DNA of 63,976 nt, counting the filler, from Octopus bimaculoides (Eukaryota): NCBI RefSeq assembly GCF_001194135.2. It is 8 parts of 8 records of this genome, joined end to end, with 100 filler letters (N's around TTAATTAATTAA, not from the genome) between each part and the next. Parts side by side here need not be neighbours in the genome. Positions count along the whole stretch, not along the records: positions 11,718 to 36,068 come from NC_068988.1; 7 more parts are not named here. One strand, 5' to 3'. Position numbers and translations under genes: made by a program. A model generated the notes under the pieces. It searched no databases and had not been told where the DNA came from. It saw nothing but the letters and a program-made list of their open reading frames with translations. This document shows, piece after piece, positions 13,558-34,805 of this stretch (the stretch's first letter is position 1; each line of letters begins with the position of its first letter).

Positions 13558-14610
13558 ATGGACTCATCTGAATCAGGCACCAAAATATCAGAATCATATT
13601 CAGTTCATATAAGAATGGACGGCAACTCTCCAAAAACCGTAAGTGAGAGCACCTTCAATGAATACCTGGAGAAAATCAGACGTCTTGCAATTATAAGTTC
13701 TATTCCTTCTAAAATGAGTTTAGAAATGTGGAAAAGATCTGATATGAAAACACGAATTCTGTATTTATGTCTCCCTTTACTCTATCTAATCTCCACACTT
13801 GATATTTTACGCTTTATATGGTTTATTGTAGCAAGTTATACATCAAACAATAATAAAAGTATATTAGGGGAATCTTATATGCTCATGATGAAGATATTCC
13901 CAAGTATATTATCACTGATCGTTATCTGGAAACGCAATCACATCTACGGATTAATCGATGATTTTCAAACTTATATTCCAATATGCCCAAATAATATATT
14001 GATGAAACGGTACAACAAATTTGGAGCATGTACTGTTTTAATTAATATATATTGTTATTTTATCATAGCCGCTATATTCCAAATTATTTTACCGACAACT
14101 TTAGTTGATCCAGAATATTTTATGGAAGCGTTAGGATTTCCATTATCACGAGAAAATAAGTTTTTTGGGTTTATGTTGATATTAAATTTCTCGACAGATA
14201 TATGGAATGCAATCCTTATTTTGTCATCTGACAGATTATATGATGCATTAACATCAATATTCATAAAAGAATTTAATTATTTATCAGATAAACTTAAAGA
14301 GTCCATACAGGAAATTCAACATTCGAATAGAAGAATCTCTCAGAGACATATAAATCTTAATGAAATATTAACACAAATAATTAAGCAACATACTAGACTG
14401 AGTCATTTGACAAAAGGAATTAACTCGCTATTTCAGCATTTTAATGGGTTGATGGTATTAGTATTCAGTCTTAACTGGTGTATCATAGCATATGAAATAG
14501 CAAATAACTTAGTCAATCAGAAAGGCACCGTACTACAAATTGTTTCAGGAACAACGTCTGGACTATATTTTTTATATCTGATCTACAGAGGACTGGTGTT
14601 TAATTCGTCT
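13558..14610 (+). CDS. GRL/7TMIC-like chemoreceptor, large first exon (copy A1, 351 codons, TM1-TM6)
   Basis: Six hydrophobic segments and an IIKQHTRLSHLTKGINSLF loop motif before TM5, resembling the GR H..L......N..F motif. Ends YRGLVFNSS|gtaagt (phase-0 donor at 14611). Paralogous to five downstream copies. Confidence 0.75.
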
Positions 14611-14978
14611 GTAAGTATCTGTTTTCTGTATTTTTAATGCATAATTCATTGAAAACAAAGGTGTTATTTCCCGTCTATTTCCACGATCATCTCCATATCT
14701 GCTCACTTCGATTCCCCTTATAGCATCTCTTTATCCCTCTGTCTCGTTCATTGTTAGAGAATTAAGGGTTGTAAGTTCCGATCTTTCCACATATGTATGT
14801 ATGTATGTATGTATCTATGTATTTATGTATGTTTGTGTTTATGTATGCATGCATGTATTAATAAGTATGTAGAAGGTTGAAAAGTAACACAAGAGTTGAT
14901 ATATATATATATATATATATATANNNNNNNNNNNNNNNNNNNNNNNNNNNNNNNNNNNNNNNNNNNNNNNNNNNNNNN

Positions 14979-15400
14979 CAGAAAAAGTAATGGAGAGAAG
15001 GAAGTTCACTATTTTTTATTAATATATTAGTCATCTTCGCGTCTTACAGCCCTTTCAATTAATACACAATAATTTAATTACAAATTAGTGCTTTAACTTG
15101 CATTTCTGTGACATGACCATAATTCCATCAGAGAATAAAAAAAAAAAAAAAGATGTCACCTTGAGATGGTATATGTGGACCTAACAATTCATTTCAGCAG
15201 ACGGCTGAAATGAATTGTTAGGTTCACATATAACATCTCAAGGCTATTTCTTTTTTTTCCTCTAATGAAATTATGCTCATGTCACATAAATGAAAATATA
15301 ATGTATTAATTTGTAATTAAAGGGCTGTAAGAAGCGAAGATGATCAATTTGTTAATGATAAATAAATGTGAACTTCCTTATCTCCGTTAACAATTTGCTT
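14979..15400. mobile_element. Fold-back (palindromic) non-autonomous element
   Basis: About 200-bp imperfect inverted arms around a near-perfect hairpin centred near 15200 (ctaacaattcatttcagc-agacg-gctgaaatgaattgttag). Confidence 0.6.
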
Positions 15401-15401
15401 A

Positions 15402-15447
<46 letters not shown>

Positions 15448-15596
15448 TATTGATTTCAAATGTTTCTCACATCACAATTATGTATCCATTGCTCTTCAAA
15501 TCAACTCTTTGTGAACTCATTACTTTAAACTCTTGCTAATTCTATAAATGTTCATTAATAACTTGTGAAAAAATCATTACAGCATATTCGTTCCTT

Positions 15597-15612
15597 GGGT
15601 GTGCTTAACATT
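15597..15612 (+). promoter_or_regulatory. Conserved upstream motif of psiB0 (GGGTGTGCTTAACATT)
   Basis: 120 nt upstream of the ATG; resembles the A1/A2/B1 motif. Confidence 0.35.
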
Positions 15613-15716
15613 AAGTTATGAAAAGTTATATTTGTTCATGTATGATTTTTCGTCATGTAACTAATAGCATATCAGAGGGTCACTTTGTCATACATATTTT
15701 TATATTATTTTCTAAC

Positions 15717-16743
15717 ATGGAATCGTCATAATACTACTGGCGAAATATGTGTCTCTTTCAATATAAATACCGATCAATCTAAATCAAATGTAATAAAAAA
15801 TATTATATTCATTCCTGCTAAAAGTTAAACATCTTTCGCTTACAAGATTCTTTTCTCATGGGATAATTATAGAACAATGGAAAGATTATGGATTAAAGTG
15901 ACGAATAATTTATATTTTAATCCCATTTATGTATTCAATTTCTATGCTTAATATTATGTGCTTGCTTCGTTTATCATAATGATTTATTCTAAAGAAAACC
16001 TTGAGTCGCTCTTTGGGAAAAGCGTTCTTCTTTTGCTAAAGATATAACCATGTTTAATTTTCATAAATATGTTTTGAAACAGATCTCATACCTGCCAATT
16101 AATCCATGAATTCGGTAACCACATTCCTAGAAACCAAATTGCTCAAGATATGGCTATGTACCACACCTAGTGTACATGTTATGTCGTATATAACATATGT
16201 TATACTGTGGTGGCGATTGCTGAGATCCAGGTTGCTTTAAGTTTGACACTTGTAGATCCGGATTTCTTCTTTCATGTCATGGCTTTCCAGATATTACGTG
16301 AGAGCGAATTGATGTTAATTAGTTTAGTAATTAATGCATGATAAATTTATGGGTGACAAGTCTTATCATATCAAATTATATAGTACTCGTTGGATTTCTG
16401 TTAATTATGATAGATGAGTTTGAATATTTATCAAAGAAACTGCAGTATAATTTACCGGGTAAACAAGACGATCATACAAACATATCCCCCAACAAAAGTC
16501 CTTGCATTGATATATTGAATAAGATAATTAAGCAGCTAGGCAGACAATGTTGATTACATGAGATTATGAACAAAACATCTCATGTTACGGCCGCCATTAC
16601 ATTTCTCCTGTTTCGTCTTTGCACATGGAATCTCCAGTGTATTAATAAAATAAAAATGATATTTACTTCAAATGATTTTCGCAATGGGAATAGCATCAAG
16701 TTGTTTCCTGTTAATGTACAAAGATCTTCAGGTTAATTTGAAT
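15717..16743 (+). pseudogene. GRL-like exon pseudogene, subfamily B (psiB0)
   Basis: ATG at 15717. Interrupted translation aligns to B1/B2 (WKDYGLK*RIIYILI, LFGKSVLLLLKI*, LIHEFGNHIPRNQ, DEFEYLSKKL, LNKIIKQ, YKDLQVNLN) with stops and frameshifts. The donor position reads ATAAAT instead of GTAAGT. Confidence 0.75.
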
Positions 16744-17078
16744 ATAAATATTTGCTTTTCTAATTTGCTGCTTCGTTCGTAAGTGTTGTTTAAATCCAAA
16801 AATTCAGTATCATATTCGTTTACTGGTGTTAGTTGGAATGATATCTACACTTATTTGAAACCACCACGCCTAGCTAAGTTTTTTTCATTGAGCAAAGCAG
16901 CAAGTTAAAGTTATACTTGAAGTGTGTTTCTAATCAAAATATATTCTGGCAGCTTACACAAAGAGTGAAATACACTTCCGCCAAAACAACAAAACCTCAA
17001 AGACACACATGCTGCGCACAGCCAAAGCCATACAGATAAGCATACACATGCATATCAATATATGTGTTCGTATATGCA

Positions 17079-17126
<48 letters not shown>

Positions 17127-17422
17127 NNNNNNNNNNNNNNNNNNNNNNNNNNNNNNNNNNNNNNNNNNNNNNNNNNNNNNNNNNNNNNNNNNNNNNNNNN
17201 NNNNNNNNNNNNNNNNNNNNNNNNNNNNNNNNNNNNNNNNNNNNNNNNNNNNNNNNNNNNNNNNNNNNNNNNNNNNNNNNNNNNNNNNNNNNNNNNNNNN
17301 NNNNNNNNNNNNNNNNNNNNNNNNNNNNNNNNNNNNNNNNNNNNNNNNNNNNNNNNNNNNNNNNNNNNNNNNNNNNNNNNNNNNNNNNNNNNNNNNNNNN
17401 NNNNNNNNNNNNNNNNNNNNNN

Positions 17423-17458
<36 letters not shown>

Positions 17459-18421
17459 ATTATCCCGTCATTAAACGACGTATGAGGGGAGAACAATTTC
17501 TTACCGAACAGACACACAGATTACTTGTCTATAGTGATCAAATGTTTGTGTAGATATAAGCTCCATCCCTCCATTTGATCGACATTACCTGTACAGATGC
17601 AACTTGTGGCATATGTGTGTGCGTGAGTGTGTATTGGTGTGTGTGTGTGAGCGAGAGAGAGAATGTGTGTATGGCTCACAATTGAAGTTGTATTTGGATA
17701 TTGTGATTAAGGTGCAAGTTTCGAGCACTTGTCTGTAACTTTTTTGTTTTTCTCCTGGATTTGTAAAAGTAATATGCCAACATCTCTAGACTCTTTTCCT
17801 CATAGCTATCCTACATTCTCAAAATTATACGGGTAACTTCAAACATTTTCATTCAATATATAATGTTGTTACATTTTGTGTACATTATTAGCGAATTAAA
17901 ACTCAAAAGAGAAAGTGAGAGACCTTGCAAATGAAAATGGAATACTCTGCACTGAATGCAATGAATATTTAAATTTGCGATGAATTGGACGCAGTGAATA
18001 TTTAGATTTGCGAGAAATTGGAGTTTAAAAAATTCAATAAACTTGAGAAATCCAAATTATAAAAATTTCTTAGAACATGAATTTATAAAAATATTTCCAG
18101 ACGGTCAACTCTTTAATAACATCTTTCTCTTAGTACTTTTAGTAATTGTTACATACGTAATTAGTAAGCGTCTTTCTCCGTTTTATATACATATATATAT
18201 ATGTAAATATATATATATTTATATTTATATATATAATCTATCTTCGTCTGTTATATATATATATATNNNNNNNNNNNNNNNNNNNNNNNNNNNNNNNNNN
18301 NNNNNNNNNNNNNNNNNNNNNNNNNNNNNNNNNNNNNNNNNNNNNNNNNNNNNNNNNNNNNNNNNNNNNNNNNNNNNNNNNNNNNNNNNNNNNNNNNNNN
18401 NNNNNNNNNNNNNNNNNNNNN

Positions 18422-18720
18422 AGAAAGGAAAATGCACAGAGTTTACGTAGTTTTAGTATATTTTCAAATGAAAGAGTGTTGTCGTTGTCGACCGGTTTCG
18501 CTTTTGGTAATCATGATTTTGAAATTATTGTAATTTCGTATTTTCTCAGGGTTTAATCTATTTTTCTTTCATAGAAGAACATAGACTAAAATATTTTAAA
18601 GAAATATGAAATTACAATAATTTCAATGACATTAACGAAAGCGAAACGGTTTGACAACCACAATATACTTTCATTTAAAATATATTAAAACTATGAAAAC
18701 TGTGCATTTTCCACTTTTGT
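18422..18720. mobile_element. Fold-back (palindromic) non-autonomous element
   Basis: ggaaaatgcacag..tttcgc..gaaattattgtaatttc mirrored by gaaattacaataatttc..gcgaaac..ctgtgcatttttcc. Confidence 0.6.
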
Positions 18721-19939
18721 TTTTATAGACAAATTAGAAACTTGTGTATAGACATATTAGAAACGTGAAATAAATGAAACATATGAAGCATCAAGTAAAG
18801 TATATATACGTATGTATTAGCAAAGAAAAGAAATGTAGACATCGTCAGATAGACCATCAATTTATTAACTTCAATTTCGAACAAAAATCAATCTTATAAC
18901 CTACAATTAATTTAAAATACAAGTACATTTTCAATATTGTAAATTGAGTATTCCCCCCGTGTTAGAAATCACCATAAAAAAGATTCACATCGTAAAAGAT
19001 TGAGTGATCATTTGCAGAATTAGCATATCTACAGACAATGCATGAAGCGCGTGTGCATGTTAATGTTTTTAAACAAATACCATTACTTGTATATATGCAA
19101 TTTATACCTATACATATATATATATTTATATATATATGTATATAGACATATACATAAATGTATGTATATATGTATATATATATATATATATNNNNNNNNN
19201 NNNNNNNNNNNNNNNNNNNNNNNNNNNNNNNNNNNNNNNNNNNNNNNNNNNNNNNNNNNNNNNNNNNNNNNNNNNNNNNNNNNNNNNNNNNNNNNNNNNN
19301 NNNNNNNNNNNNNNNNNNNNNNNNNNNNNNNNNNNNNNNNNNNNNNNNNNNNNNNNNNNNNNNNNNNNNNNNNNNNNNNNNNNNNNNNNNNNNNNNNNNN
19401 NNNNNNNNNNNNNNNNNNNNNNNNNNNNNNNNNNNNNNNNNNNNNNNNNNNNNNNNNNNNNNNNNNNNNNNNNNNNNNNNNNNNNNNNNNNNNNNNNNNN
19501 NNNNNNNNNNNNNNNNNNNNNNNNNNNNNNNNNNNNNNNNNNNNNNNNNNNNNNNNNNNNNNNNNNNNNNNNNNNNNNNNNNNNNNNNNNNNNNNNNNNN
19601 NNNNNNNNNNNNNNNNNNNNNNNNNNNNNNNNNNNNNNNNNNNNNNNNNNNNNNNNNNNNNNNNNNNNNNNNNNNNNNNNNNNNNNNNNNNNNNNNNNNN
19701 NNNNNNNNNNNNNNNNNNNNNNNNNNNNNNNNNNNNNNNNNNNNNNNNNNNNNNNNNNNNNNNNNNNNNNNNNNNNNNNNNNNNNNNNNNNNNNNNNNNN
19801 NNNNNNNNNNNNNNNNNNNNNNNNNNNNNNNNNNNNNNNNNNNNNNNNNNNNNNNNNNNNNNNNNNNNNNATATATATATATATATATATATATAAATAT
19901 ATATATATTATTTATTTGAAGGTTACAATACATGTACTA

Positions 19940-20660: not shown

Positions 20661-21406
20661 CACCTTACTTCAGTTCTCTGCAGTCAGGTCAGCTCGCCAA
20701 ATCCTTTCATTTTGCGACGGACTGACGACCCTTTCAGTTACGGAATATATATACGTCATGAATCCGGGAAACCGACACTTGAGTGTCGGTAAGACTTAAC
20801 AAGGAAATTTTAAATGCTTCGTTTACTGAAAGAAACATAGTTGATAAGACAGGATATAAGGAAACAGATAATATCGATCCCACATTCAGGTTTACTTTAG
20901 AGTAAANNNNNNNNNNNNNNNNNNNNNNNNNNNNNNNNNNNNNNNNNNNNNNNNNNNNNNNNNNNNNNNNNNNNNNNNNNNNNNNNNNNNNNNNNNNNNN
21001 NNNNNNATATATATATATACATACACATATATATATACATACACTTATCGATATGCATTCATGCAGAACGAGAGGATGTAAAATGTTCAAACTTTGAGAT
21101 GATGCGTTTGTATGTGCGCATAGTTTTCTTGAACACCCCCCCCCACTTTTAAACGTTTGCGACGGACTATCGTCCCGCCCAATTAGGGTATGTATATAAA
21201 CCACGAAACCAGGAAACCGGACCTTTTCACTCAGTATGTTTGGAGAAACTTAACTACCTTTTCATTAGCTTAAAGTAACATGGATCATTTGACATAATAT
21301 AATCAATTAATAACAGATTATATCGATCCCACATTCAGGTTCCCTTCAGAGTAAGTAAAAGTTAATAGAAATGACTGCCTACATTGATTTTGTCACAATG
21401 AATAAA

Positions 21407-21422
21407 GGCGTGCTTATATTTT
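21407..21422 (+). promoter_or_regulatory. Conserved upstream motif of A2 (GGCGTGCTTATATTTT)
   Basis: 211 nt upstream of the ATG, inside a ~300-bp upstream block homologous to that of A1. Confidence 0.4.
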
Positions 21423-21617
21423 ATCATAATTATACATCCAGTCATATGTATTAATGAATGTAGTAGGGAGCTGTTCTCAAAACATTAGAAAAAATCAAAC
21501 TGGAATTGAGAAACATTAAATAAGAAAAACGCATATAAATATTCTGCTACTTTTGCATTCAGGTAAATTCAGTTTTTCTAATATCATATCAAGTTATATC
21601 AACAAACTAAGAAACTC

Positions 21618-22670
21618 ATGGAAGCATCTAAATTGGGCCCCAAAATTTCGGAATCACATTCAGTTCATATAAGAACGAGCAACAACTCTTCAAAAACCGT
21701 AAATGAGAGACCTTTGAAGGAATACCTGGAGAAACTGAAACGTCTTGCAATTGTATGTTCCATTCCTTCTAAAATGAGTTTAGAAATTTGGAAAAAATCT
21801 GATGTGAAAACACGAATTCTGTATTTATGCCTCCCTCTGATATATTTAATTTCCACGTTTGATATTTTACGTTTCATATGGTTTATGGTAGCAAGTTATA
21901 CATCAAAGAATACTGAATATATTTTGGAGAAAAGTTTTATGCTCATGGTGAAGATGTCCTCAAGTATATTAACACTGATCGTTACCTGGAAACGAACTCA
22001 AGCCAGCGCTTTAATCGATGATATTCAAACTTATATTCCGATATGCCCAAGTAATATATTAATGAAGAGGTACCGCAAATTTGGAGCAAGCAATATTTTG
22101 ATCAACGTATGTGTTAATTTTGTCATATCCGCTATATACCAAATTATTTTACCGTTAATTTTTACAGATCCGAAATATTTTCTGGAGGGCTTAACTTTTC
22201 CATTATCACGGCGGAATGGTTTTTTTGCGTTTATGTTAATAATAAATTTCTCGACAAGTATATGGAATTTTCTTCTTTTTCTGCCATTTGCGATATTATG
22301 CAATGCATTACCACCAATACTCATAGAAGAATTTAAATATTTATCAGAGACGCTTAGAAAATCCATAGAGGAACTTCAAGATTCCAATCGACAAATTTTT
22401 CGGAGAAGTATAAATCTCAATGAAAAATTAAATGAAATAATTAACCAACATACTAGACTGAGCCTATTGACAAAAGGCTTGAACTCGGTGTTTCAGTTTT
22501 GTAATGGCATGGTTGTATCACTCTTTCTTATTATCTGCTGTATTATCTCGTATGAAATAGCAAATGAATTAGTCTATCAGGAAGGCTACGTACTACAGGT
22601 TATTACGGCAATAATGGTTGCACTGTATTGCTTGTATCTGATATACAGAGGATTGGTGTTTAATTTGCAT
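21618..22670 (+). CDS. GRL/7TMIC-like chemoreceptor, large first exon (copy A2, 351 codons)
   Basis: Close paralog of A1 with identical exon length (1053 nt). Contains IINQHTRLSLLTKGLNSVF and ends YRGLVFNLH|gtaagt (phase-0 donor at 22671). Confidence 0.75.
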
Positions 22671-22955
22671 GTAAGTATCACTTTTCTGAATTTGTTATGA
22701 GAAATTCGTTCAAAACTGAGGGGTTATTTTGTCTTTATATATATATATTAGGGATAAAAATCCAAATTTACAGGTAAAAACTCAATTAAATTCAATTTAT
22801 TAAAAATTAAAATTAAATTAAGTTTCACAGTATAAAACATAAATATATGGTTTTAGAGAAAAGAACCAAGGTTCATGAACTCATCGATGAAAATCCACTG
22901 TCACATATAGAAAAATTAATAAGTAAAAGCACAATAAATAAGTATAATATAATAC

Positions 22956-23009
<54 letters not shown>

Positions 23010-23431
23010 NNNNNNNNNNNNNNNNNNNNNNNNNNNNNNNNNNNNNNNNNNNNNNNNNNNNNNNNNNNNNNNNNNNNNNNNNNNNNNNNNNNNNNNNNNN
23101 NNNNNNNNNNNNNNNNNNNNNNNNNNNNNNNNNNNNNNNNNNNNNNNNNNNNNNNNNNNNNNNNNNNNNNNNNNNNNNNNNNNNNNNNNNNNNNNNNNNN
23201 NNNNNNNNNNNNNNNNNNNNNNNNNNNNNNNNNNNNNNNNNNNNNNNNNNNNNNNNNNNNNNNNNNNNNNNNNNNNNNNNNNNNNNNNNNNNNNNNNNNN
23301 NNNNNNNNNNNNNNNNNNNNNNNNNNNNNNNNNNNNNNNNNNNNNNNNNNNNNNNNNNNNNNNNNNNNNNNNNNNNNNNNNNNNNNNNNNNNNNNNNNNN
23401 NNNNNNNNNNNNNNNNNNNNNNNNNNNNNNN

Positions 23432-23810: not shown

Positions 23811-24320
23811 GCGTTATTATTATTATTATTGTTATCATTATTATTATTATTATCTTATAATATTTACTTTGTATTATATTATACTTATTTATTGTGCTTT
23901 TACTTATTAATTTTCTATATGTGACTGGATTTTCATCGATGAGTTCATGAACCTTGGCTCTTTTCCCTAAAACTATATATATATANNNNNNNNNNNNNNN
24001 NNNNNNNNNNNNNNNNNNNNNNNNNNNNNNNNNNNNNNNNNNNNNNNNNNNNNNNNNNNNNNNNNNNNNNNNNNNNNNNNNNNNNNNNNNNNNNNNNNNN
24101 NNNNNNNNNNNNNNNNNNNNNNNNNNNNNNNNNNNNNNNNNNNNNNNNNNNNNNNNNNNNNNNNNNNNNNNNNNNNNNNNNNNNNNNNNNNNNNNNNNNN
24201 NNNNNNNNNNNNNNNNNNNNNNNNNNNNNNNNNNNNNNNNNNNNNNNNNNNNNNNNNNNNNNNNNNNNNNNNNNNNNNNNNNNNNNNNNNNNNNNNNNNN
24301 NNNNNNNNNNNNNNNNNNNN

Positions 24321-24360
<40 letters not shown>

Positions 24361-24364
<4 letters not shown>

Positions 24365-25065
24365 TCATCCCGGTAATTTTAGTTGATCCGGAATATTTTT
24401 GGGAGGTTTCAGCTTTTCCATTATCACAGCAGCATAAGTGTCTTGCGTTTATGTTAACAATTTTCTCGACAGATGTATGGAATTCTCACATTTATGTCAT
24501 CTGTGAGATAATGTGATGCATTAGGATTAATATATTTGGAAGAATCTAACTATTCATCAGAGACGCTTAGAAAGTCCATACAGGAAATTTAAGATTCGAA
24601 CAAGGATATCATTCAGATATCTATAAATCTCAATGAAAGATTAACTGAAACAATTAACTTATATACAAGACAGTCAATTCGTTTCCAGTCTAGTCACAAG
24701 GCCTGAAATTTTGTTGGGGAGGGGGGGGGCCAGTCGATTAGATCGACCCCAGTACGTAACTAGTACTTAATTTATCGACTCCGATAAAGACAGGCGAAAT
24801 ACCGCTAAGTATTTCGCTTGGCGTGCTAACGTTTCTGCCAGCTGACCGCCTTACAAGACTGAGGCAATTGGCAAAAGGCATAAACTCGGTATTTCGGTTT
24901 TGTAATGGCATGATTGAACTACTAGTCCTTATTTGCTGTATCATATATGAAATAGGAATTGATTCAATCAATCAGAAAGACTACCTACTACGAATGTTTG
25001 CGGAAGTAATTACCGCACTCTTCTGCTTATATCCGTTATACAGAGGATTTGAAGTCAATTCATCT
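24361..25065 (+). pseudogene. GRL-like exon pseudogene, subfamily A (psiA3), 3' half visible, SINE-disrupted
   Basis: Translates to ILVDPEYF..AFPLS, FSTDVWN, KGINSVFRFCNGMI, YRGFEVNSS, with frameshifts. A SINE piece (24672-24851) is flanked by the direct repeat TACAAGAC. The donor is degenerate (gtgtct). The 5' half is lost in or before the gap at 23987-24320. Confidence 0.75.
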
Positions 25066-25179
25066 GTGTCTGTTTTGTTTTTGTATTTCAAATGATTGTA
25101 AATTCAAATCATTTGGGTTCTGCAAAATATTTTCTATATAGAGATTCTCTCAATCTCATCTATTTGCTATCTTTTTTCC

Positions 25180-25448: not shown

Positions 25449-25497
<49 letters not shown>

Positions 25498-25619
25498 TAT
25501 TTACATCCATATGAATATCCTCAAACACGAACACATACATACAAAATGTTACGGCTATACTGGACGTTATTTATGTCTCCATTCATCAGGAAGAGCTTGA
25601 TGTATTAGTGAACAGTCAA

Positions 25620-26330: not shown

Positions 26331-27992
26331 AAAAGTGCTGTAGGTTTGGATGGGATATTATGTTCTTCCCCTGTTTATGCAAACTGTGATATTTTTATCG
26401 AGCACCGGTATAGATATATAGAAAGATCGATCAATACATAAATATAAAGATAAGTAGATAGATGGATAGATAGATAGATAGATAGATAGATAGGTAGATA
26501 GAGAGATAGATAGATACATACATAGACAAACAGAGAATCAGACAGATAAATATATATATATACATACATGTTTGTAGAAATATTGATGCTTGTTATATAA
26601 ATGTTTTTTATTATATGTGTATACATGTACCTCCGTGTATGAAATTGCTTTTAATCATATTTGAACAGAAGTGATATTTTTATATATTGATGGGCAGAAT
26701 ACACTAATGCTTCTTTTATGAAATCGTAACCTGGGCAAATAGCATTGATTTCATATATGTTTTTCACATCACAATTATGTATCCATTACTCTTCAAACCA
26801 ACTCTTTGTGAACTCATTACATTCAACGCTTGCTAATTCTCTAAGTGTCCATTACTAACATTAGCAGAAAGAAAGCCCACCGGGCGGTTTTCTGTTGATC
26901 TATATATATATATATATTCCAAAGTAGCAAACAGAAACCAACACAGAGGAAAACAAACATATATATATCCAGACAAGTTTCCAACTCTTCTGGTGCTTCA
27001 TATTTTATGCTTGGTTAGTTGAACGAAATTGACGAGAAAATTTTTGTCCAGATGGTAAAGCAATCCGGATGCTTATTCTTATAAATTTCAGCTCAAAGTT
27101 AAATAATATCATTAGAACAGGAGGAGAACACATAATGTCATGTGATTATAACGAAATTAACCCACTTTTAGTGAGAATTTTAAATGCCATACAACCTCAG
27201 TTTGTAACTATCACTTTCCTGAAAGTGCCCATAGCATTGAATGCATAACAAAAATGCAAGCTGAAAAATATATGTGCTGTGTACGTCTCATTCAAATTTC
27301 CTCTTACTTTCTATTTTCGAGCTGTTCGGCTGATAGATTTTCGTATCCTGGCGTATAAAATGTTTCGACATAAAGTGATAATTCGTTTAAATTACATGCG
27401 CTCGAGGAGAATAGATTTTACTGTTCATATTATTTCGACAACCGATAGTACCTTACATGGAAAGAAATCAGCACATATTCATAATATCACATACCCACAG
27501 AACGTCACGGATAAAACAAAACAATTTTTTCTCGTGTATTCCATGAGCAGCAAATAATAAATTCTAGAATGGGCAAATTTCAGTCGAAGGTGTAATAGAA
27601 TTATGTCACAAATAATCTCTGTATATCCGAGAATATTTCTTCAAGTATAAACAAGCAAAAAACTAGTTTACCTCTAGTTTAAGATAGAAAGGAATTCTTC
27701 TGCAAGAGATAAACGCACGAAGACATTAGTCCATCGATGAAGTAGCGTCATGTTTACCCATTAGTAGATAAAAGGCCTATGTCATACTTATTTGTAGAAA
27801 ATAAATGCATATTCAAGATCATGTATAGGCGTATGTACAATGAGTGTATCTTTGTATTCTGTGTGATAATATAGACAGGTTGAAAAATATTTCACTTGAT
27901 AATTAATTACATATGACCTAGCTACTCGTTGTAAATAAAACATCAAATATCCCAATGATGAAATGCTGCTACACAATAGAAATCATCCGTTT

Positions 27993-28008
27993 GGGTGTTG
28001 CTTATATT
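27993..28008 (+). promoter_or_regulatory. Conserved upstream motif of B1 (GGGTGTTGCTTATATT)
   Basis: 238 nt upstream of the ATG; resembles the motifs of the other copies. Confidence 0.35.
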
Positions 28009-28230
28009 AAATGTAATATGACTTAGCTAGAAAGTAAATATTTTAGTGTATTTACCCGTTGAGTGAGTTTTTAATTGACTACGAGGAGAATTAATAATTA
28101 ATTACTTCGTATAAATAATACAAATATTGTAGTCTGACGAGTGATACTGTCTATCGTACCGACGCAACAGACTAAATGTAGGTGAACAGGAGTGTGCAAG
28201 AAATTTATTTTGTCCATATGCAACTTTGTA

Positions 28231-29313
28231 ATGGCTTTGCAGTCTTTACCAACACTTCTTTCAAGTAAGGAATCAGCTCATACGTTTAACGATATGTATG
28301 AATCATTTTATATAAATATCGAGGAGTATCGATCAAAGACACTAAAAGAAACAGTTCTAAGTTCGTTTCTGAAGAAACTTAAACACATTTCTATTTTGTA
28401 CAGCTTTCCGTCAACAATGAATATAAAAATTTGGAAAACGTCTGGATTGAAAACATGGATTTATTTTATTTTGCTCTTTCTGCTGTATTTTATTCTCATA
28501 ATAGAAATTATACGATTTCCATACTTCATTTTGGTAAATTATTCAATTGAAGATGCTGAACCGCTATTAGCGAAAAGTTTTCTTTTATTATTGAAGATGG
28601 TTACTGCTATGATTGCGATAAATGTAGTTTGGAACAGGCAAACAATAAATCAATTGTTGAGAGACTTAAGTGATTATATTCCAGTAAACCAAGATGCTGA
28701 GTATATGGCAAGGTGTAACGAAAGAGGAATGTGTTATATCAAAACTAATATATGTTCTGTGGGTTTGCTATCTATTTCACTCCAAATAATTTTACCACTT
28801 GTTTTGGTTGATCCGCATTATTATCTAGATGTCTTTGCTTTCCCAGGATCCCGTGAGAATAAGTATTTTGTATTTGTTTTAGTACTAAATTGTATGACAA
28901 ATATGTTGGCTTACATGCTTTCATCGCCTGTTCAATCCATGTCCGGTATTACTCTGCTACTTATAAAAGATGAGTTTCAATGTTTGTCAGAGAAACTTCG
29001 AAATGTTTTTCGGAAAATGCGAAGTGAACAGACACGAGTATTTCTAACGCGTACAGACTGCAATAAAATTTTATATCAGATAATAGACCAGCATGGGAAT
29101 ATTTGTGAATTACTAAAAGCTTTAAACGCAGTAAATCAAGCTGGATGTACACTTACTGTAATATTGGTCGCTATTCAATGCTGTTTTATAACATATGAAT
29201 TAGCAAACGGCTCAGTTAGCTCCAAAGTCTACGGGATTCAATCGATATTTGGAATATGTGCAGTAGTGGTGGTTTTGCTGGTGATATATAATGCTCTACA
29301 AATTAATTACTGC
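28231..29313 (+). CDS. GRL/7TMIC-like chemoreceptor, large first exon (copy B1, 361 codons)
   Basis: ATG at 28231 (MALQSL) aligns with the B2 start. Six TM segments and IIDQHGNICELLKALNAV. Ends YNALQINYC|gtaagt (phase-0 donor at 29314). Confidence 0.75.
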
Positions 29314-29344
29314 GTAAGTATTATATTTATTATTTTCCCTTAGC

Positions 29345-31179
29345 TGTTCTTTCATTTCTTTCTCCATGATTTCATTGAACTCTAGTATACCAAGTTATTT
29401 ATAACCTTCCTTTTCGACTTGTTTAATCGCTTCTCCATTAAGTAATTTTATCCTCGCTAGGAACAGTACCTTACCTCTTTTCAGGTTTCTTATACCGCAC
29501 CTCTTGAGTCCGATTTCCATCTTGATATCAGTACTAATCTAGTGGACTATATTCCCCAAAGCACTCACTTGTGCCTCATCCTTGCCATACAGCTTCAAAT
29601 CATCCATGAAGCGGAGATGTTTGATTCTTTGAGATTTTCCCTATCTCATGTTCCTTTTCTTCAGCGCCAAGGTCAGAGGAATCCTACAAAGAAAAAAATA
29701 GTAATGGTGATAAGTTATCTCATGGGAAAATCCTTCATCTGATATCCAGGCTGTCCAAGCTTTGTACGTACGGTGTACATCCCCACCATACTTCACTTCA
29801 GAAAATACGTTTTATGCCTTGCACTTCCAACAATCCTAAGCACTCGGCGTTCCAGGAATGTGGAATCGTATCAAGATTTGCGGTAGTTAATCTAATCCAT
29901 TCTCAGATTTGTCCTCCTTCGGTTACGCTCATGCATTACAATTTTGTTTATCAATAATTAGTGTCCAATACTTATGCATCCCTTCTAGCAACCCTTTTGT
30001 TTCATCGCTAAGGTGTCGTCAACATCAAGAAATTTGTACATTCCTTCTGCAATCCCTCCTGATAGTAACTTCCACGTCAATGGAAGGTAAGAAATCGGCT
30101 TGTCATTGTCGGCAGCATTTCCTTTCAATGTACACTTCATGCACAACGCTGTTCGTCTTTCGGTCAACCACTCCGGGATTTTCTCTTCTCCATGTGCGAT
30201 CATGGCACCACCTGAACATTGTTATCCAAAATCCCTGCACACCATCAGGTCCTGCTGCCCTGCAGTTGCTCATCTTTTTGCTCATATTTCTGATACTGTA
30301 TTCGGTAAAGTGGGGTAGATCCTTGCTGGGATAAACGTCAGGCTACAGAGCCATTTATCTCCAGAATTGTGTTGTATTTGCTTACTCCATATATCACTCC
30401 AAAACTGTTGACTTTCATCAGCAGTAGGGATTAATCTTTTGCTTTCTATATCACCCTTAATTATGATAAAATGCTTTTTGGTCGATTCTAAACAATCGTT
30501 TTGTCGGTTTTGTTTAATCTGTAGTTCAAACATAGCTAGCTTTGCTTCTTGGCAAGTATGCGCTGCTCCACTCCTCCAACTACAACATTTCGTCCTTTTT
30601 TTTTATCAACAGCATACTTTTCCAATTTTTCAAATTTGCGATCATTCTTCATTTCTCGTCTTCTTCATTTTCCCTGTCAAGTTACTGCTCCTCCGACAGC
30701 TTATATCTCCTGAGATTCTTTTCCGCCAAGATTTTCTTTATTTCCTTCTCTTTCTGTCAACGTTCTGTTCGCATTCGTCTTCAGTACCAGACTTTCTGTC
30801 ACAAACTTATTTGAAGCCTTGATGACTCTCTTACTCTTTTACTCTTTTACTTGTTGCAGTCATTTGACTGTGGCCATGCTGGAGCACCGCCTTTAGTCAA
30901 GCAAATCGACCCCAGGACTTATTCTTTGTAAGCCTAGTACTTATTCTATCGGTCTCTTTTTGCCGAANNNNNNNNNNAATCGACCCCAGGACTTATTCTT
31001 TGTAAGCCTAGTACTTATTCTATCGGTCTCTTTTTGCCGAACCGCTAAGTTAGGGGGACGTAAACACACCAGCATCGGTTGTCAAGCGATGATGGGGGGA
31101 CAAACACAGACACAGACACACGCACAAACACACGCACAAACACACGCACAAACACACGCACATAGACACATACACACAA

Positions 31180-31218
<39 letters not shown>

Positions 31219-31800
31219 CACATATATACGACAGGCTTGTTTCAGTTTCCGTCTACCAAATCCACTCACAAGGCTTTGGTCGGCCCGAGGACACTTGCCC
31301 AAGGTGCCACGCAGTGGGACTGAATGTGGTTCGTAAGCAAGCTACTTACACACAGCCACTCCTACGTCTGAGTTTATCTGTTTGTGTGATATTCTTAATT
31401 TCAACGTACTTGAATACATTATTGACTCTACTTGTCTCTTGATTTAGTCTCCATTTGTCACCTTTCTTGAAGTCGCATATAAATTTTGTCTCCTCTGCAT
31501 TTACTAGAACCAAAATTCAGCTCATTACTATCTGGTCTCGACTCTCGCACAACTCGCGGCAATATATACTTCTTGGCAATTATCCATTTCTTCTATTGCG
31601 CAACTTCCGTTTCTCGTATGACCAGCATTACTTGATATCCTTCTTTTGATGGTTTCTAACTCCACTTCTGATAACCATCCATTCGTCCGTATTCCTCTTT
31701 TTACTGCTACTTAAAGCGGTAATGGCTTCATCGATAGTGTTATTAGAAGGGAAGCTATATTTTTTATAGTGAGAGGAAGAACACTTAATGGAGTCTGCAT
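29345..31800 (-). mobile_element. Degenerate R4/Dong-like non-LTR retrotransposon, interrupted by SINEs at ~30840-31370
   Basis: Minus-strand fragments NGWLSEVELETIKRR, IPTADESQQFWSDIWS, AAGPDGVQGFWI, PEWLTERRT..KPISYLPLTWKLLSG..QKGC and HLRFMDDLKLYGKDE. The 5' end abuts a (TAA)n tract. Confidence 0.75.
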
Positions 31801-31831
31801 TCTAAATATCATCATAATCATTATCCTCATC

Positions 31832-31872
<41 letters not shown>

Positions 31873-32471
31873 GGTTATTGATTGATTGATTGATTGATTG
31901 GTTGAGAGATAGCGCATGCCATCAAAGTGATACTAGGATACAAGTATACGAAACCCAATATATCCATCATGACTACGCGTCTGAAATGTGTACACCAGGT
32001 ACATGCATCTCAAAATGGTGATCTCATAGGACGAACGGCGCATGACCTCGCAGGTGGATCCCAGGTAAAATGAGGCCCATCCTGATCAAAAGGTTCCTGA
32101 ATAAGGTTTGTCAAAGGGTGATGCGGAAAACACCTACGTTACCAGAGGTGAATTATTATGAAACCCCAAACTACTCCTCTGAACACATGGCTACGTCTGC
32201 CTACGTCTGCCTACGTCTGCCTACGTCTGCCTATGTCTGCCTACGCCTGCCTACGCCTGCCCATGATCAGAGATGCACATATCGTCAGCCACCAAGGGAC
32301 ATGCTCAACTAGTTAAGGTAAAAAAAACTTACAAGCAAATCTCTGGTATTGAGCAGAATATTTGTTGTAGCCCATCTTTATACCAAGACAAAATAATGTA
32401 CATGATAACACTTCCAATCAGGTAAGCTCACAACCCATGGGAGCCACTACCTGGTACTGCATCAGGACATA

Positions 32472-32534
<63 letters not shown>

Positions 32535-32803
32535 CATTATCATCATCATCATTATTATTATTATTTTATGTTTGACTTTTGCTTTGCATTTGTACAAGTT
32601 AGATCCAAGTCTCACCCAGAGACCTCAAGAGACAACAAGTTAGAAGTTCATGTAGGTGTTATGCCTAGGGTACCATATATTTGGATTTGTACAGTTTTGT
32701 TCAAGTGAATGTTTAAGAAACCATAAGAAAATTATGTGTTTGCTTTAAAATTTGAGATCACATAGACAGTATTTTACGTAGGATATGGGCAGTTCCCATG
32801 AGC

Positions 32804-32869
<66 letters not shown>

Positions 32870-33554
32870 GTCAGTGAGCTGGCAGAATGGTTAGCACACC
32901 GGCATTTCGTCCGTCTTTATTATCTGATTTCAAATCCCGCGCAGATGACTTTCACTTTCATTCTTTCGATCTCTATCAATTACGTTCTAGCAAAACACTG
33001 GGGTTGATGCAATTGACTACACCCGTCACATTTCAGGCCTTGTGCGTTTAGTAGAAAACATTATTATTATTATCATCACGAATAATGATACATTTATTAC
33101 TGCATCCATTATTTAGACAAAGTAGCTGACTGGCATGTACATCGCCACATTAATGTGGCTTTTGTTCTTACTTTCACAGTTATAATTAACAATATTTCTA
33201 AGCTAAGATTTGGTTTTAGTATTAGTTTCTTCACAATATTTATTTCGCAGTCGATAAAATTTTCAGGATTTGGATGCAATGATATCGTCATATACGACCG
33301 TCAGCTTGTGTATTTATATGCCTATGTATTTGTGCATAAAAAATTATATTATTAGGCTGCAGGAAATATGGCTAATGTATTACTGCGATAGGCATTTTCC
33401 CTTACTTTTCTCTGCTCGTATAACCTATAGCCAACTTAATACACGGTGAAAGTCATTAGAGAACATCAGCTAATGAATTGATAATAAAAAACTCCAGATG
33501 AATTATGGGTTTATATACAATCAACAAACTAATGAGATATTGTATTTACCATCT

Positions 33555-33570
33555 GGGCGTGGATTTCTTT
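33555..33570 (+). promoter_or_regulatory. Upstream KLF/Sp-like box of B2 (GGGCGTGGATTTCTTT)
   Basis: 165 nt upstream of the ATG; only the GGGCGTGG core is shared. Confidence 0.3.
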
Positions 33571-33719
33571 ACTGCATGAAAACGTATTATGTATTGATTA
33601 TAAATGTTATAGCTAGTGTTCGCAGATGTAAATTATGAACTCTCCTTCAGACACAGAAATCAAAACTCGATCTCGCTGCGATTGTGCGTTATATTCACTA
33701 TTTGCTTCCAAAATATGTA

Positions 33720-34805
33720 ATGACTCTTAGAAATCTTTATCCACAGTTTTCTTCAAACATGGAATCACTTCATTCAGTCTTCGACACATATCAGTCAGTG
33801 GAGATAGGTATGGACAGCTATCAGTCAAAAGCTATAAAACACACTGTTTTTAATTCATTCCTGGAGAAAATTCGGTGGTTTACAATTTTATGTAGGTTTC
33901 CTTCTGAAATGAATATAAAAACTTGGAAATCATCAGGAGTAAAAGAACGAATTTTGTACTGTATCCTTTTATTGCTCTACATTATTATTATAAGCGAAAT
34001 TGTACGTTTTCCTTGGTTTATTTTGGAAAATTATTCAACTGAAGATACTCGACCTCTATTAGCGAAAAGTTTTCTTCTATCTCTCAAATTCTTTCCCGGT
34101 ATGAATGCAATAAATATAATCTGGAACAGACAACTTTTCAATAAGTTAATACAAGAATTCGGTAGTTACATTCCGATGAACCAAAATACTGAATATATGG
34201 CTAAATACAAACAATTTGGAATGCTTTATATTAAAATTCAGATATGTTTAAGTCTGTTGATACCTTTTGTCGCCCAGGGTCTTTTACCAATTTTGTCAAA
34301 TAACGGGATTCGTTTCCTAGATGCTTTAGCATTTCCAGTATCAATTAAGAGCGAATTTTATGGATATGTTGTGGCATTAAACTGCATGACAAGTGTATTC
34401 ACTTATATACTGATAGCATCGAATAGCATACTCTTCTACATATCACTTTCTATTTTAAAAGATGAGTTTAAATTTTTGTCGGAGAAACTTGAAAACGTCT
34501 TTCAAAACATGCGCACTGAAAATACGGAATTATTTGTTGTGCGTACTAATTACAACAAAATATTATATCATATAATTAATCAGCATGGGATTCTTTGTGA
34601 CTTGCTCAAATCTATCAATGGAATATCTCAAAGTACATATACAGTTACATGGATATTTTTACTTTTTAATTGCTGTCTTATGGCATATGGAATAGCAAAT
34701 AACTTAGTAAAAGAACATGGATACATGATACAATTTATCTATGGTATAATAGCGATTGTATACTGTTTGCCGGCAATACATAAAGGTCTACAGCTAAATT
34801 TCCAT
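33720..34805 (+). CDS. GRL/7TMIC-like chemoreceptor, large first exon (copy B2, 362 codons)
   Basis: ATG at 33720 (MTLRNL). Six TM segments and IINQHGILCDLLKSINGI. Ends HKGLQLNFH|gtaaga (phase-0 donor at 34806). Confidence 0.75.

What the first reader, a model, noticed from the sequence alone, without database searches (positions are those of the whole stretch)
13558..34805. Proteins look like a lineage-specific expansion of gustatory-receptor-like (7TM ion channel) chemoreceptors
Seen: six hydrophobic segments, a long loop before TM5 ending IIxQHxxLxxLxKxxNxxF, and short extracellular loops, with no DRY/NPxxY GPCR motifs and no Cys-loop. Established: H..L......N..F before TM5 is typical of the insect GR / 7tm_7 superfamily, which has GRL members in other molluscs. 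Known octopus chemotactile receptors are Cys-loop channels, a different family. Inference: if the genome is cephalopod, this is a second, rapidly diversifying chemosensory family. The two subfamilies (A: YRGLVFN; B: LQ(I/L/V)N) are interleaved in order A, psiB, A, psiA, B, B, consistent with birth-and-death evolution.
Basis: partly seen in the sequence, partly recalled or inferred. Interest (0 to 1): 0.75.

Follow-up and report, generated by a model that had tools for sequence, protein, structure and literature searches.

The report
Octopus taste-receptor-like gene with alternative first exons
The six repeated units are alternative large first exons, four intact and two decayed, of one Octopus bimaculoides gene of the insect gustatory-receptor-like ion-channel family, and all appear to splice to three small shared exons about 24 kb beyond the window, as in insect taste-receptor loci such as Gr39a.

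Summary
Six same-strand homologous units are present: four intact ORFs, each with six hydrophobic segments, and two decayed copies. No assembly gap interrupts an intact ORF.

The family call is right. Once the missing C-terminus is added, the products pass the Pfam 7tm_7/7tm_6 thresholds. The AlphaFold model matches only insect OR/Orco/GR structures. The gene also carries the GR hallmarks: three phase-0 3' introns and a TYxxxxxQ motif in TM7.

The "six genes, birth-and-death" reading needs revision. Every intact ORF runs into a conserved GTAAGT/GTAAGA donor at the same codon, and none encodes TM7.

The piece is identical to O. bimaculoides chromosome CM046608.1 and lies inside the annotated gene LOC106880487. 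That locus holds about 15 such large exons in tandem, 10 of them with a complete, undisrupted reading frame. A single set of three short constant exons follows them.

In O. sinensis, two annotated isoforms switch from about 32% identity to 100% identity exactly at this donor. This is the architecture of insect Gr39a, Gr28b and BgerGr60a-m.

Splicing of the four window exons, their promoters, expression site, channel activity and any chemosensory role are inferred, not shown. I rate it a new member of a known kind, of moderate interest.

The parts
13558..14610 (+). Variable first exon A1: 351 codons from ATG to the last codon before the donor, encoding TM1-TM6. The donor GTAAGT is at 14611-14616.
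   Evidence: Intact ORF. Donor position. Alone it hits Pfam 7tm_6 at 36.5 bits, above the cut-off. Joined to the constant exons it scores 7tm_6 41.8 and 7tm_7 29.4 bits.
13469..13474 (+). TATAAA element 89 nt upstream of the A1 ATG. It is a candidate core promoter; the evidence is weak.
   Evidence: It is conserved in the upstream alignment of A1, A2 and V3. Six of ten intact units carry TATAAA at -150..-41, against 14% of random 110-nt windows, but the units are paralogues and so not independent.
15800..16743 (+). Decayed variable exon psiB, of the V2 lineage. It has several in-frame stops and two frameshifts, and its donor is mutated to ATAAAT at 16744-16749.
21618..22670 (+). Variable first exon A2: 351 codons encoding TM1-TM6. 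The donor GTAAGT is at 22671-22676, and TATAAA is at 21534.
   Evidence: Joined to the constant exons it scores 7tm_7 23.0 bits, E 5.9e-5, below the 26.6 cut-off.
24358..25065 (+). Decayed variable exon psiA, of the A lineage (50% identity to A2). Only residues ~175-351 are present. It has stops, a frameshift and a ~165-nt insertion at about 24680-24843, and its donor is weakened to GTGTCT. The 5' half is replaced by (TA)n and the gap at 23986-24320.
28231..29313 (+). Variable first exon B1: 361 codons from the first ATG (the frame is open from 28192), encoding TM1-TM6. The donor GTAAGT is at 29314-29319, and TATAAA is at 28110.
   Evidence: Joined to the constant exons it scores 7tm_6 51.7 and 7tm_7 38.8 bits.
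33720..34805 (+). Variable first exon B2: 362 codons from the ATG at 33720, with an alternative ATG at 33759, encoding TM1-TM6. The donor GTAAGA is at 34806-34811, and TATAAA is at 33599.
   Evidence: Joined to the constant exons it scores 7tm_7 31.9 bits.

Best explanation
The window is an internal 24-kb stretch of one complex gustatory-receptor-like (GRL, 7TMIC) locus, LOC106880487 on Octopus bimaculoides chromosome CM046608.1.

What the units are:
- Each unit is a long alternative first exon with its own ATG, encoding the N-terminus and TM1-TM6.
- By analogy with solved insect OR/GR structures, that region would be the ligand-binding part.
- Each intact unit ends at a conserved phase-0 GTAAGT donor.

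How the product is made:
- A transcript that starts at one unit skips all downstream units and splices to three short constant exons.
- These are C1, C2 and C3, of 23, 30 and 17 codons, and they lie about 24 kb beyond the piece's end.
- They supply the last intracellular loop and TM7 with the motif TYSIVAYQT.
- By analogy with Orco/OR/GR structures, TM7 would be the pore-lining and subunit-contact helix.
- The locus can thus encode about 10 receptors of ~420-430 residues that differ in TM1-TM6 and share one TM7.
- Exon cassettes are duplicated and decay (psiA, psiB) as whole genes do in other chemoreceptor families.

Shown:
- Family membership, by profile, fold, motif and intron positions.
- The array-plus-one-constant-set anatomy.
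- Selection keeping the exons open.
- Annotated isoforms in two octopus species that use this splice.

Inferred:
- That A1, A2, B1 and B2 themselves are transcribed and spliced this way.
- That each has its own promoter.
- That the products form ligand-gated cation channels.
- That they serve chemosensation.

The confidence given applies to the family assignment and the variable/constant exon architecture. Confidence in the chemosensory role is lower, roughly 0.4-0.5.
For: Location and anatomy:
- The piece equals L001 18806-43156 exactly, and so lies inside the called gene at 7781/10001-73768.
- tblastn maps about 15 variable units on the + strand of L001, and constant-region exons only once, after the last unit.
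- The constant exons are at L001 67322-67390, 70320-70409 and 73715-73768. All have AG acceptors and all three introns are phase 0.
- Ten units have a complete reading frame, one of which (V1) is broken by an in-frame stop. Nine of the ten carry GTAAGT/GTAAGA at the same codon; the tenth (V15) has GTAAAT.

Absence of TM7 in the window:
- tblastn and a profile of two constant regions find no constant exon in the window. The best hit is E 0.46 on the wrong strand.

Splicing seen in annotation:
- O. sinensis LOC118764605 isoforms X1 and X2 are ~32% identical in the variable part. They have an identical 70-residue C-terminus that starts exactly at the donor position.
- Both O. sinensis gene ranges end at the same coordinate, 105 kb or more from their starts.
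- The O. bimaculoides isoforms of 273 and 187 aa likewise share one 3' end.

Family membership:
- Full-length or joined products pass the Pfam 7tm_7/7tm_6 cut-offs.
- The AlphaFold2 model has pLDDT 77.9 and pTM 0.74.
- Its top 20 PDB matches are all insect OR/Orco/GR structures, with TM-score 0.5-0.65. The next matches drop to 0.2 or below.
- K+R counts are 25 inside against 5 outside, which fits an N-terminus-in topology.

Selection:
- dN/dS is 0.35-0.61, with Z of 2.8-4.6.
- Fewer than 0.1% of neutrally evolved copies would keep the frame open.

Literature:
- The same architecture is described for insect GRs in PMC2204066 and PMC6175461.
- The GR hallmarks are taken from PMC2680840, PMC5203786 and PMC7746228.
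Against: - No transcript evidence was available for the four window exons. None of them is in the protein database as an annotated product.
- The annotated O. bimaculoides isoforms use V1 and V2, are 5'-truncated, and may be partly computational.
- A2 joined to the constant exons stays below the Pfam cut-off.
- The TM7 motif ends in T rather than F.
- The N gaps, about 2 kb in total, could hide short exons.
- The promoter evidence is only a TATAAA element shared by paralogues. A possible acceptor-like TTTGCATTCAG lies ~60 nt upstream of the A-type ATGs. That leaves open a shared 5' leader with mutually exclusive splicing instead of separate promoters.
- GRLs outside arthropods are not always chemoreceptors (PMC7746228).
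Confidence: 0.8

Rival explanations
1. Six separate tandem genes. Each unit would have its own downstream TM7 exons, and the family would evolve by birth and death of whole genes.
For: Tandem same-strand paralogues with interleaved pseudogenes look like an ordinary chemoreceptor gene cluster. N gaps between units could in principle hide small exons.
Against: - No constant-region-like exon follows any unit in the window, including the gap-poor 4.3 kb after B1.
- None lies between any of the ~15 units in 60 kb of L001. Only one C1-C2-C3 set exists, after the last unit.
- The annotated isoforms in two species share a single 3' end and an identical C-terminus.
Confidence: 0.05
2. The units are dead exon-1-only duplicates. 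Only the last unit (V15), which lies 447 nt from C1, would be a working gene. The upstream copies, including A1, A2, B1 and B2, would never be spliced productively.
For: V15 plus C1-C3 looks like a compact ordinary gene. No transcript evidence exists for the window units. Some units are clearly decayed.
Against: - Open frames of 351-362 codons and intact donors persist at dS of 0.36-0.91. Fewer than 0.1% of neutral simulations keep the frame open.
- dN/dS is significantly below 1.
- Annotated isoforms in both species use far-upstream units, not only the last one.
Confidence: 0.07
3. The units are internal, mutually exclusive exons. A shared 5' leader exon and a single promoter would feed the array, instead of one promoter per unit.
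For: A polypyrimidine-AG-like TTTGCATTCAG lies ~60 nt upstream of the ATG in A1, A2 and V3.
Against: - Each unit has its own ATG, preceded by a conserved TATAAA at -84 to -130.
- The called gene ranges of the isoforms start at different places, although these may be CDS ranges.
- The insect precedent is described as tandemly arrayed long first exons (PMC6175461).
Confidence: 0.1
4. The proteins belong to an unrelated family: a GPCR, a transporter, a TE protein or a Cys-loop channel.
For: A2, B1 and B2 alone give no significant Pfam hit. PDB sequence searches find nothing.
Against: - Pfam 7tm_7/7tm_6 are passed once TM7 is added.
- The top 20 Foldseek hits are all OR/Orco/GR structures, while GPCRs score TM ~0.13.
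- The GR intron and motif hallmarks are present.
- No DRY, NPxxY or Cys-loop motif is present.
Confidence: 0.01

Closest known systems
Drosophila Gr39a complex locus (PMC2204066)
   Same: Several large exons are alternatively spliced to three small conserved exons. Exon duplication, pseudogenisation and loss occur within the locus, under overall purifying selection.
   Different: Gr39a has four or five large exons, against about 15 here (10 with complete frames). It is an insect locus rather than a cephalopod one. Splicing is documented for Gr39a and only inferred for the window's exons.
Blattella germanica alternatively spliced GR loci, e.g. Gr60a-m (PMC6175461), and Drosophila Gr28b
   Same: [quoted passage not shown] There are up to 13 isoforms, some of them pseudogenic. 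The shared exons encode the conserved C-terminus.
   Different: These are arthropod loci, with RNA-seq support for many splices. The octopus proteins are only 10-15% identical to the insect OR/GR structures in the Foldseek alignments.
Octopus sinensis LOC118764605 isoforms X1/X2 (P0001, P0004) and the neighbouring LOC118764606 (P0015)
   Same: This is the orthologous or paralogous locus. It has the same variable/constant junction. Its constant region differs from that of O. bimaculoides at 2 of 70 residues. Pfam 7tm_7 is passed.
   Different: Only two isoforms are annotated there. X1 is 67% identical to A2 and 61% to A1, so one-to-one orthology of the window units is unclear. LOC118764606 has its own, diverged constant region.
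Animal GR-like (GRL) proteins of molluscs and other non-arthropods (Robertson 2015, as cited in PMC7746228 and PMC5203786)
   Same: Seven TM helices, a TM7 motif, and conserved phase-0 introns near the 3' end.
   Different: I found no report of the alternative-first-exon architecture, or of cephalopod members, in the searchable literature.
Vertebrate clustered protocadherins and UGT1A (own knowledge; analogy only)
   Same: A tandem array of variable first exons is spliced to shared constant exons.
   Different: The proteins are unrelated. Stochastic promoter choice is shown for protocadherins and is untested here.
Octopus chemotactile receptors (CRs; PMC11526382)
   Same: They are candidate ionotropic sensory receptors in tandem arrays in the same species.
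   Different: CRs are pentameric Cys-loop channels derived from nicotinic receptors, so the fold and family differ. Their function and sucker expression are demonstrated. Neither is known for this locus.

Membership tests
Insect GR / animal GRL family (7TMIC superfamily; Pfam 7tm_7 PF08395, 7tm_6 PF02949) | Seven transmembrane helices | tested here: met
   The window exons alone have six hydrophobic segments. The seventh is in constant exon C3, outside the window. The AlphaFold2 model of the O. sinensis full-length isoform shows seven long helices plus TM4-TM6 extensions.
Insect GR / animal GRL family (7TMIC superfamily; Pfam 7tm_7 PF08395, 7tm_6 PF02949) | Intracellular N-terminus (topology inverted relative to GPCRs) | tested here: met
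   This is a prediction only. K+R counts are 25-28 in the N-terminus and the TM2-3, TM4-5 and TM6-7 loops, against 5 in the other loops and the C-terminus. It was not tested experimentally.
Insect GR / animal GRL family (7TMIC superfamily; Pfam 7tm_7 PF08395, 7tm_6 PF02949) | TM7 motif TYhhhhhQF (PMC2680840; PMC7746228) | tested here: met
   Constant exon C3 encodes LIGSIITYSIVAYQTRS. T, Y and Q are conserved and the final F is replaced by T. The motif lies outside the window, in L001.
Insect GR / animal GRL family (7TMIC superfamily; Pfam 7tm_7 PF08395, 7tm_6 PF02949) | Three phase-0 introns near the 3' end, the last immediately before the exon that encodes the TM7 motif (PMC2680840, PMC5203786) | tested here: met
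   The introns V|C1, C1|C2 and C2|C3 are all phase 0 with GT...AG boundaries, and C3 starts 7 codons before TY.
Insect GR / animal GRL family (7TMIC superfamily; Pfam 7tm_7 PF08395, 7tm_6 PF02949) | Profile HMM score above Pfam's gathering cut-off | tested here: met
   Joined V+C products: A1 scores 7tm_6 41.8 and 7tm_7 29.4; B1 scores 51.7 and 38.8; B2 scores 7tm_7 31.9. A2 scores only 23.0, below the 26.6 cut-off. The O. sinensis isoforms score 33.8-36.5 bits.
Insect GR / animal GRL family (7TMIC superfamily; Pfam 7tm_7 PF08395, 7tm_6 PF02949) | 7TMIC fold | tested here: met
   Foldseek against the PDB gives insect OR, Orco and GR structures as ranks 1-20 (E down to 1.2e-4, TM 0.49-0.65). 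Rank 21 onward has TM of 0.23 or less. The model is of the O. sinensis relative, which is 61-67% identical to A1 and A2, not of a window product.
Insect GR / animal GRL family (7TMIC superfamily; Pfam 7tm_7 PF08395, 7tm_6 PF02949) | Tetrameric ligand-gated cation channel activity | not testable with these tools
   This needs heterologous expression and electrophysiology or cryo-EM.
Alternatively spliced GR complex loci (Gr39a / Gr28b / BgerGr60 type) | Tandem array of long first exons on one strand, each ending at the same splice-donor position | tested here: met
   Four intact exons lie in the window and ten complete ones in L001. All have a donor at the same codon.
Alternatively spliced GR complex loci (Gr39a / Gr28b / BgerGr60 type) | A single shared set of three short 3' exons downstream of the array | tested here: met
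   C1-C3 occur once, after the last unit. None is in the window.
Alternatively spliced GR complex loci (Gr39a / Gr28b / BgerGr60 type) | Transcripts joining each first exon to the shared exons | not testable with these tools
   Only public gene models are available: V1+C and V2+C in O. bimaculoides, and X1 and X2 in O. sinensis. No RNA data exist for A1, A2, B1 or B2.
Alternatively spliced GR complex loci (Gr39a / Gr28b / BgerGr60 type) | A separate promoter for each first exon | tested here: inconclusive
   TATAAA lies at -84 to -130 in 6 of 10 units, against a 14% background, but the units are paralogues. An acceptor-like sequence upstream of the A units leaves a shared leader possible.
Class A GPCR chemoreceptors | DRY and NPxxY motifs and a GPCR fold | tested here: not met
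   Neither motif is present. GPCR structures score TM ~0.13.
Cys-loop chemotactile receptors of octopus | Large extracellular ligand-binding domain with a Cys-loop, four TM helices, and Pfam neurotransmitter-gated channel domains | tested here: not met
   There is no such Pfam hit. The products have seven TM helices and no Cys-loop.

The most novel reading that the evidence does not exclude
Octopus sensory cells would choose one, or a few, of about ten variable first exons of this locus, and of neighbouring GRL loci, by promoter choice. The resulting receptor channels would differ in their ligand-binding TM1-TM6 but share one pore and assembly helix, and so could co-assemble. This would make the locus a second, previously unrecognised ionotropic chemoreceptor system beside the Cys-loop chemotactile receptors. 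Its variable/constant logic would have arisen independently of, or been inherited in common with, the insect GR complex loci.
Probability: 0.15. Interest if true: 0.7.

Novelty: new member of a known kind. Interest (0 to 1): 0.42.

Why it matters
Octopus contact chemosensation is currently explained by Cys-loop chemotactile receptors. The GR-like family has not, in the literature I could search, been described in cephalopods.

This locus shows that an octopus keeps about ten selectively maintained GR-like receptor variants. They are packaged in the same "many long first exons plus three shared short exons" layout that insects use.

Three practical consequences follow:
- The public annotation lists two truncated isoforms and none of the four intact window exons. 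Receptor counts drawn from that annotation would therefore be too low.
- Gene finders that treat each ORF as a gene will report six-TM fragments. Almost every relative in the 1.8-billion-protein library is such a read-through ORF.
- The shared TM7 makes a simple expression and assembly hypothesis directly testable.

It also raises a question about origins. The architecture may be ancestral to protostome GRLs, or it may be a repeated outcome of the conserved 3' intron arrangement.

Tried and rejected
- Looking for TM7 inside the window failed. tblastn with the O. sinensis C-terminus, tblastn with the LOC118764606 C-terminus, a two-sequence HMM against all six-frame fragments, and a TY...Q regex all found nothing credible.
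- tblastx between the regions downstream of the units was swamped by microsatellites. It yielded only a 114-nt nucleotide-level repeat.
- Pfam on the bare ORFs was positive only for A1.
- PDB sequence searches with one protein and with a profile found nothing.
- The first AlphaFold2 run, with 8 sequences, was poor (pLDDT 55). Its Foldseek result was only suggestive. It was superseded by the 22-sequence run.
- The word-indexed protein searches returned only 3-5 hits each. The exhaustive HMMER search was needed to find 25 relatives.
- The O. sinensis locus DNA could not be fetched because the gene range is over 100 kb.
- Literature searches for octopus, cephalopod or mollusc GRLs and 7tm_7 found no description of this family in cephalopods.
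- tRNA and Rfam scans of the piece were empty.
- Pfam on the LINE-like minus-strand ORFs between B1 and B2 gave no hit.
- I considered GPCR, Cys-loop, transporter and TE-protein identities and rejected them.

Full report
**1. What is in the window**

The piece (11718-36068) is AT-rich, about 30% G+C, and full of (TA)n, (TATG)n and (AAT)n microsatellites. Four long + strand ORFs stand out:
- 13558-14637, 359 aa.
- 21618-22700, 360 aa.
- 28192-29343, 383 aa.
- 33684-34823, 379 aa.

tblastn of these against the piece finds two further, broken copies on the same strand, at 15800-16622 (extended to 16743) and at 24358-25089. This gives the order A1, psiB, A2, psiA, B1, B2.

A1 and A2 are 64% identical and B1 and B2 are 47% identical. 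A units and B units are 32-36% identical to each other.

Hydropathy gives six hydrophobic segments, with a ~55-residue loop before the fifth. There is no DRY, NPxxY or Cys-loop.

**2. The gap test**

- Every N run lies between units, and none lies inside an intact ORF.
- Most of the larger gaps that I read abut microsatellites; 20907-21006 has unique sequence on its left flank.
- psiB contains no gap. Its decay is real: at least five stops, two frameshifts, and the donor changed to ATAAAT.
- psiA starts at residue ~175, directly after a (TA)n run that follows the gap at 23986-24320. Its 5' half is unsequenced or deleted.
- The sequenced part of psiA still carries stops, a frameshift, a ~165-nt insertion and a weakened donor, GTGTCT.
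- The 10-N gap at 30968-30977 is flanked by identical 64-nt sequences (D17). This looks like an unmerged contig overlap.

**3. The ORFs are exons, not genes**

All four intact ORFs run straight into GTAAGT (GTAAGA in B2) at the same codon, in phase 0. They stop 5-9 codons later, inside what is evidently an intron. The coding parts are therefore:
- A1, 13558-14610.
- A2, 21618-22670.
- B1, 28231-29313.
- B2, 33720-34805.

These encode only TM1-TM6.

The closest database protein is Octopus sinensis LOC118764605 isoform X1 (P0001, 421 aa), which is 61-67% identical to A1 and A2. It continues for 70 residues past this point, and that stretch includes a seventh hydrophobic segment.

Isoform X2 of the same gene (P0004) is only ~32% identical to X1 in the variable part. 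It has exactly the same 70 C-terminal residues, and the switch falls exactly at the donor position. Both O. sinensis gene ranges end at the same coordinate, 105 kb or more from their starts.

**4. Where the window sits**

A further hit, O. bimaculoides LOC106880487 isoform X2 (P0038), allowed 83.8 kb of chromosome CM046608.1 to be fetched as L001. The window piece is identical to L001 18806-43156, an offset of +7088, N gaps included. It lies inside the called gene, at 7781/10001-73768.

tblastn across L001 finds about 15 variable units on the + strand:
- Ten have a complete reading frame. One of them (V1) carries an in-frame stop.
- Nine of the ten carry GTAAGT/GTAAGA at the conserved codon. 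The tenth (V15) has GTAAAT.

The constant region occurs only once, as three short exons after the last unit:

| Exon | L001 coordinates | Encoded residues |
|---|---|---|
| C1 | 67322-67390 | AHQLADHIYAMPLHDLSHEAIVK |
| C2 | 70320-70409 | LSFFLHRLTSEQIGISIGGCFVINPASVLT |
| C3 | 73715-73768 | LIGSIITYSIVAYQTRS* |

All three have AG acceptors and all introns are phase 0.

No constant-like exon lies in the window. tblastn with two different constant regions and a profile against all six-frame fragments gave a best E of 0.46, on the wrong strand. The 4.3 kb after B1 has only the spurious 10-N gap.

A more distant cluster, on an ENA contig of unknown species (L002), also shows three tandem variable-type exons with no constant exon within 10 kb.

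Nearly all of the 25 relatives in the 1.8-billion-protein library are ~350-residue read-through ORFs. Each carries "VS" (GTAAGT) at the same column.

**5. Family**

Pfam:
- Alone, only A1 reaches a Pfam cut-off (7tm_6, 36.5 bits).
- Joined to C1-C3 of the same locus, A1, B1 and B2 pass 7tm_7 and/or 7tm_6. A2 reaches 23.0 bits against a cut-off of 26.6.
- The O. sinensis full-length isoforms and the neighbouring gene LOC118764606 also pass.

Structure:
- AlphaFold2 with 8 sequences was poor.
- With 22 sequences it gave pLDDT 77.9 and pTM 0.74.
- Foldseek against the PDB returned insect OR, Orco and GR structures as the top 20 hits, with TM-score 0.49-0.65. After that came an abrupt drop to unrelated folds; GPCRs score about 0.13.

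Hallmarks:
- Here the motif is TYSIVAYQT, with T in place of the final F. The three phase-0 introns are present.
- The positive-inside count fits an N-terminus-in topology.

Membership of the GR/GRL (7TMIC) family is therefore well supported. GPCR and Cys-loop identities are excluded.

**6. Are the window exons alive?**

- Pairwise dN/dS is 0.61 for A1-A2, 0.44 for B1-B2 and 0.47 for V12-V13. All are significantly below 1, with Z of 2.8-4.6.
- In simulations at half the observed dS, fewer than 0.1% of neutrally evolving copies kept an open frame.
- The intact exons are thus under selection to stay coding. Since they lack TM7, they can only be useful if spliced to the constant exons.
- Each window unit has a TATAAA 84-121 nt upstream of its ATG. 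It is conserved within lineages. This hints at separate promoters but is weak evidence in an AT-rich genome.
- An acceptor-like TTTGCATTCAG upstream of the A-type ATGs leaves open a shared leader exon.

**7. Mechanism proposed**

A transcript initiates at, or selects, one variable exon. It skips the remaining units and joins C1-C3. The product is a ~420-430-residue seven-TM subunit.

By analogy with Orco/OR/GR structures, TM1-TM6 would form the ligand pocket, and TM7 would line the pore and contact neighbouring subunits. PMC7746228 summarises the role of the TM7 motif. All isoforms would then share the same pore and assembly helix.

The steps shown and the steps inferred are listed under Best explanation.

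**8. Comparison with what is known**

[quoted passage not shown] The largest of these, BgerGr60a-m, encodes 13 receptors, and some isoforms of related loci are pseudogenic (PMC6175461).

GRLs are known in molluscs (PMC7746228). I found no description of cephalopod GRLs, or of this architecture outside arthropods, in the searchable literature.

The public annotation of this locus lists two 5'-truncated isoforms. None of the four window exons is in the protein database.

**9. Verdict**

- The family assignment is right.
- The [quoted passage not shown] reading should be replaced. The better description is [quoted passage not shown].
- It is a new member of a known kind, of moderate interest.

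Noticed in passing
window 30904-31041: The 10-N gap at 30968-30977 is flanked by two identical 64-nt sequences (30904-30967 and 30978-31041). This looks like an unmerged contig overlap, that is, an assembly artefact rather than missing sequence.
   Followed up: partly
window 14924-14978, 17127-17422, 18267-18421, 19192-19870, 23010-23431, 23986-24320: The larger assembly gaps whose flanks I read are bordered by (TA)n or (AAT)n microsatellites, so they are assembly failures at simple repeats in inter-exon DNA. The 100-N gap at 20907-21006 is the exception. Its left flank is unique sequence resembling the region upstream of A-type exons, and a 64-nt element occurs on both sides of it (20711 and 21156). 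That suggests a local ~445-bp duplication or a redundancy at the gap.
   Followed up: partly
window 13095-13158, 20711-20774, 21156-21219: A 64-nt interspersed element (TTTGCGACGGACTGACG...CATGAATCCGGGAAACCG, 75-81% identical copies) lies 400-900 nt upstream of the A1 and A2 start codons. It may be part of the duplicated unit or a SINE fragment.
   Followed up: no
window 15460-15573 and 26757-26870: A 114-nt segment, 87% identical between its two copies, lies downstream of A1 and of psiA. The conservation is at the nucleotide level in all frames, so it is not coding. It is probably a remnant of the duplicated intron or an interspersed repeat.
   Followed up: partly
window 29985-30533, minus strand; G+C ~0.41 over 29700-31700: Between B1 and B2, G+C is higher and the GC skew is strongly negative. 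Short minus-strand ORFs there resemble, by eye, the N-terminal part of non-LTR retrotransposon ORF2 proteins. Pfam gave no hit.
   Followed up: partly
window 24680-24843: A ~165-nt insertion interrupts psiA between the regions homologous to residues ~283 and ~276-279 of A2. Its origin was not determined.
   Followed up: no
L001 142-219, 77497-78492 (+ strand), and 81681-81785 (minus strand): The locus has GRL neighbours. The last constant exon of an upstream gene lies at 142-219 and is 85% identical to the O. sinensis LOC118764606 C-terminus. A very divergent variable-type exon lies downstream of C3. A C2-like exon lies on the opposite strand. Several GRL complex loci therefore seem to sit side by side.
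   Followed up: partly
L001 7331-8389 (V1) and 9269-10351 (V2): The two annotated O. bimaculoides isoforms (273 and 187 aa) start inside V1 and V2. V1 carries an in-frame stop in this assembly, although its O. sinensis counterpart (X2, 78% identical) is intact. The public models look 5'-truncated.
   Followed up: partly
L002 1435-2480, 5007-6018, 10001-11065: A contig from an ENA assembly (ERZ21867824, species not stated) carries three tandem variable-type exons of distant family members, two of them decayed. No constant exon lies within 10 kb. A Pao/RVT retrotransposon fragment is nearby.
   Followed up: partly
L001 66875-67321: The last variable exon (V15, donor GTAAAT) lies only 447 nt from C1, whereas the other units are 11-60 kb away. 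V15 plus C1-C3 looks like the original compact gene, to which upstream first exons were added by duplication.
   Followed up: no
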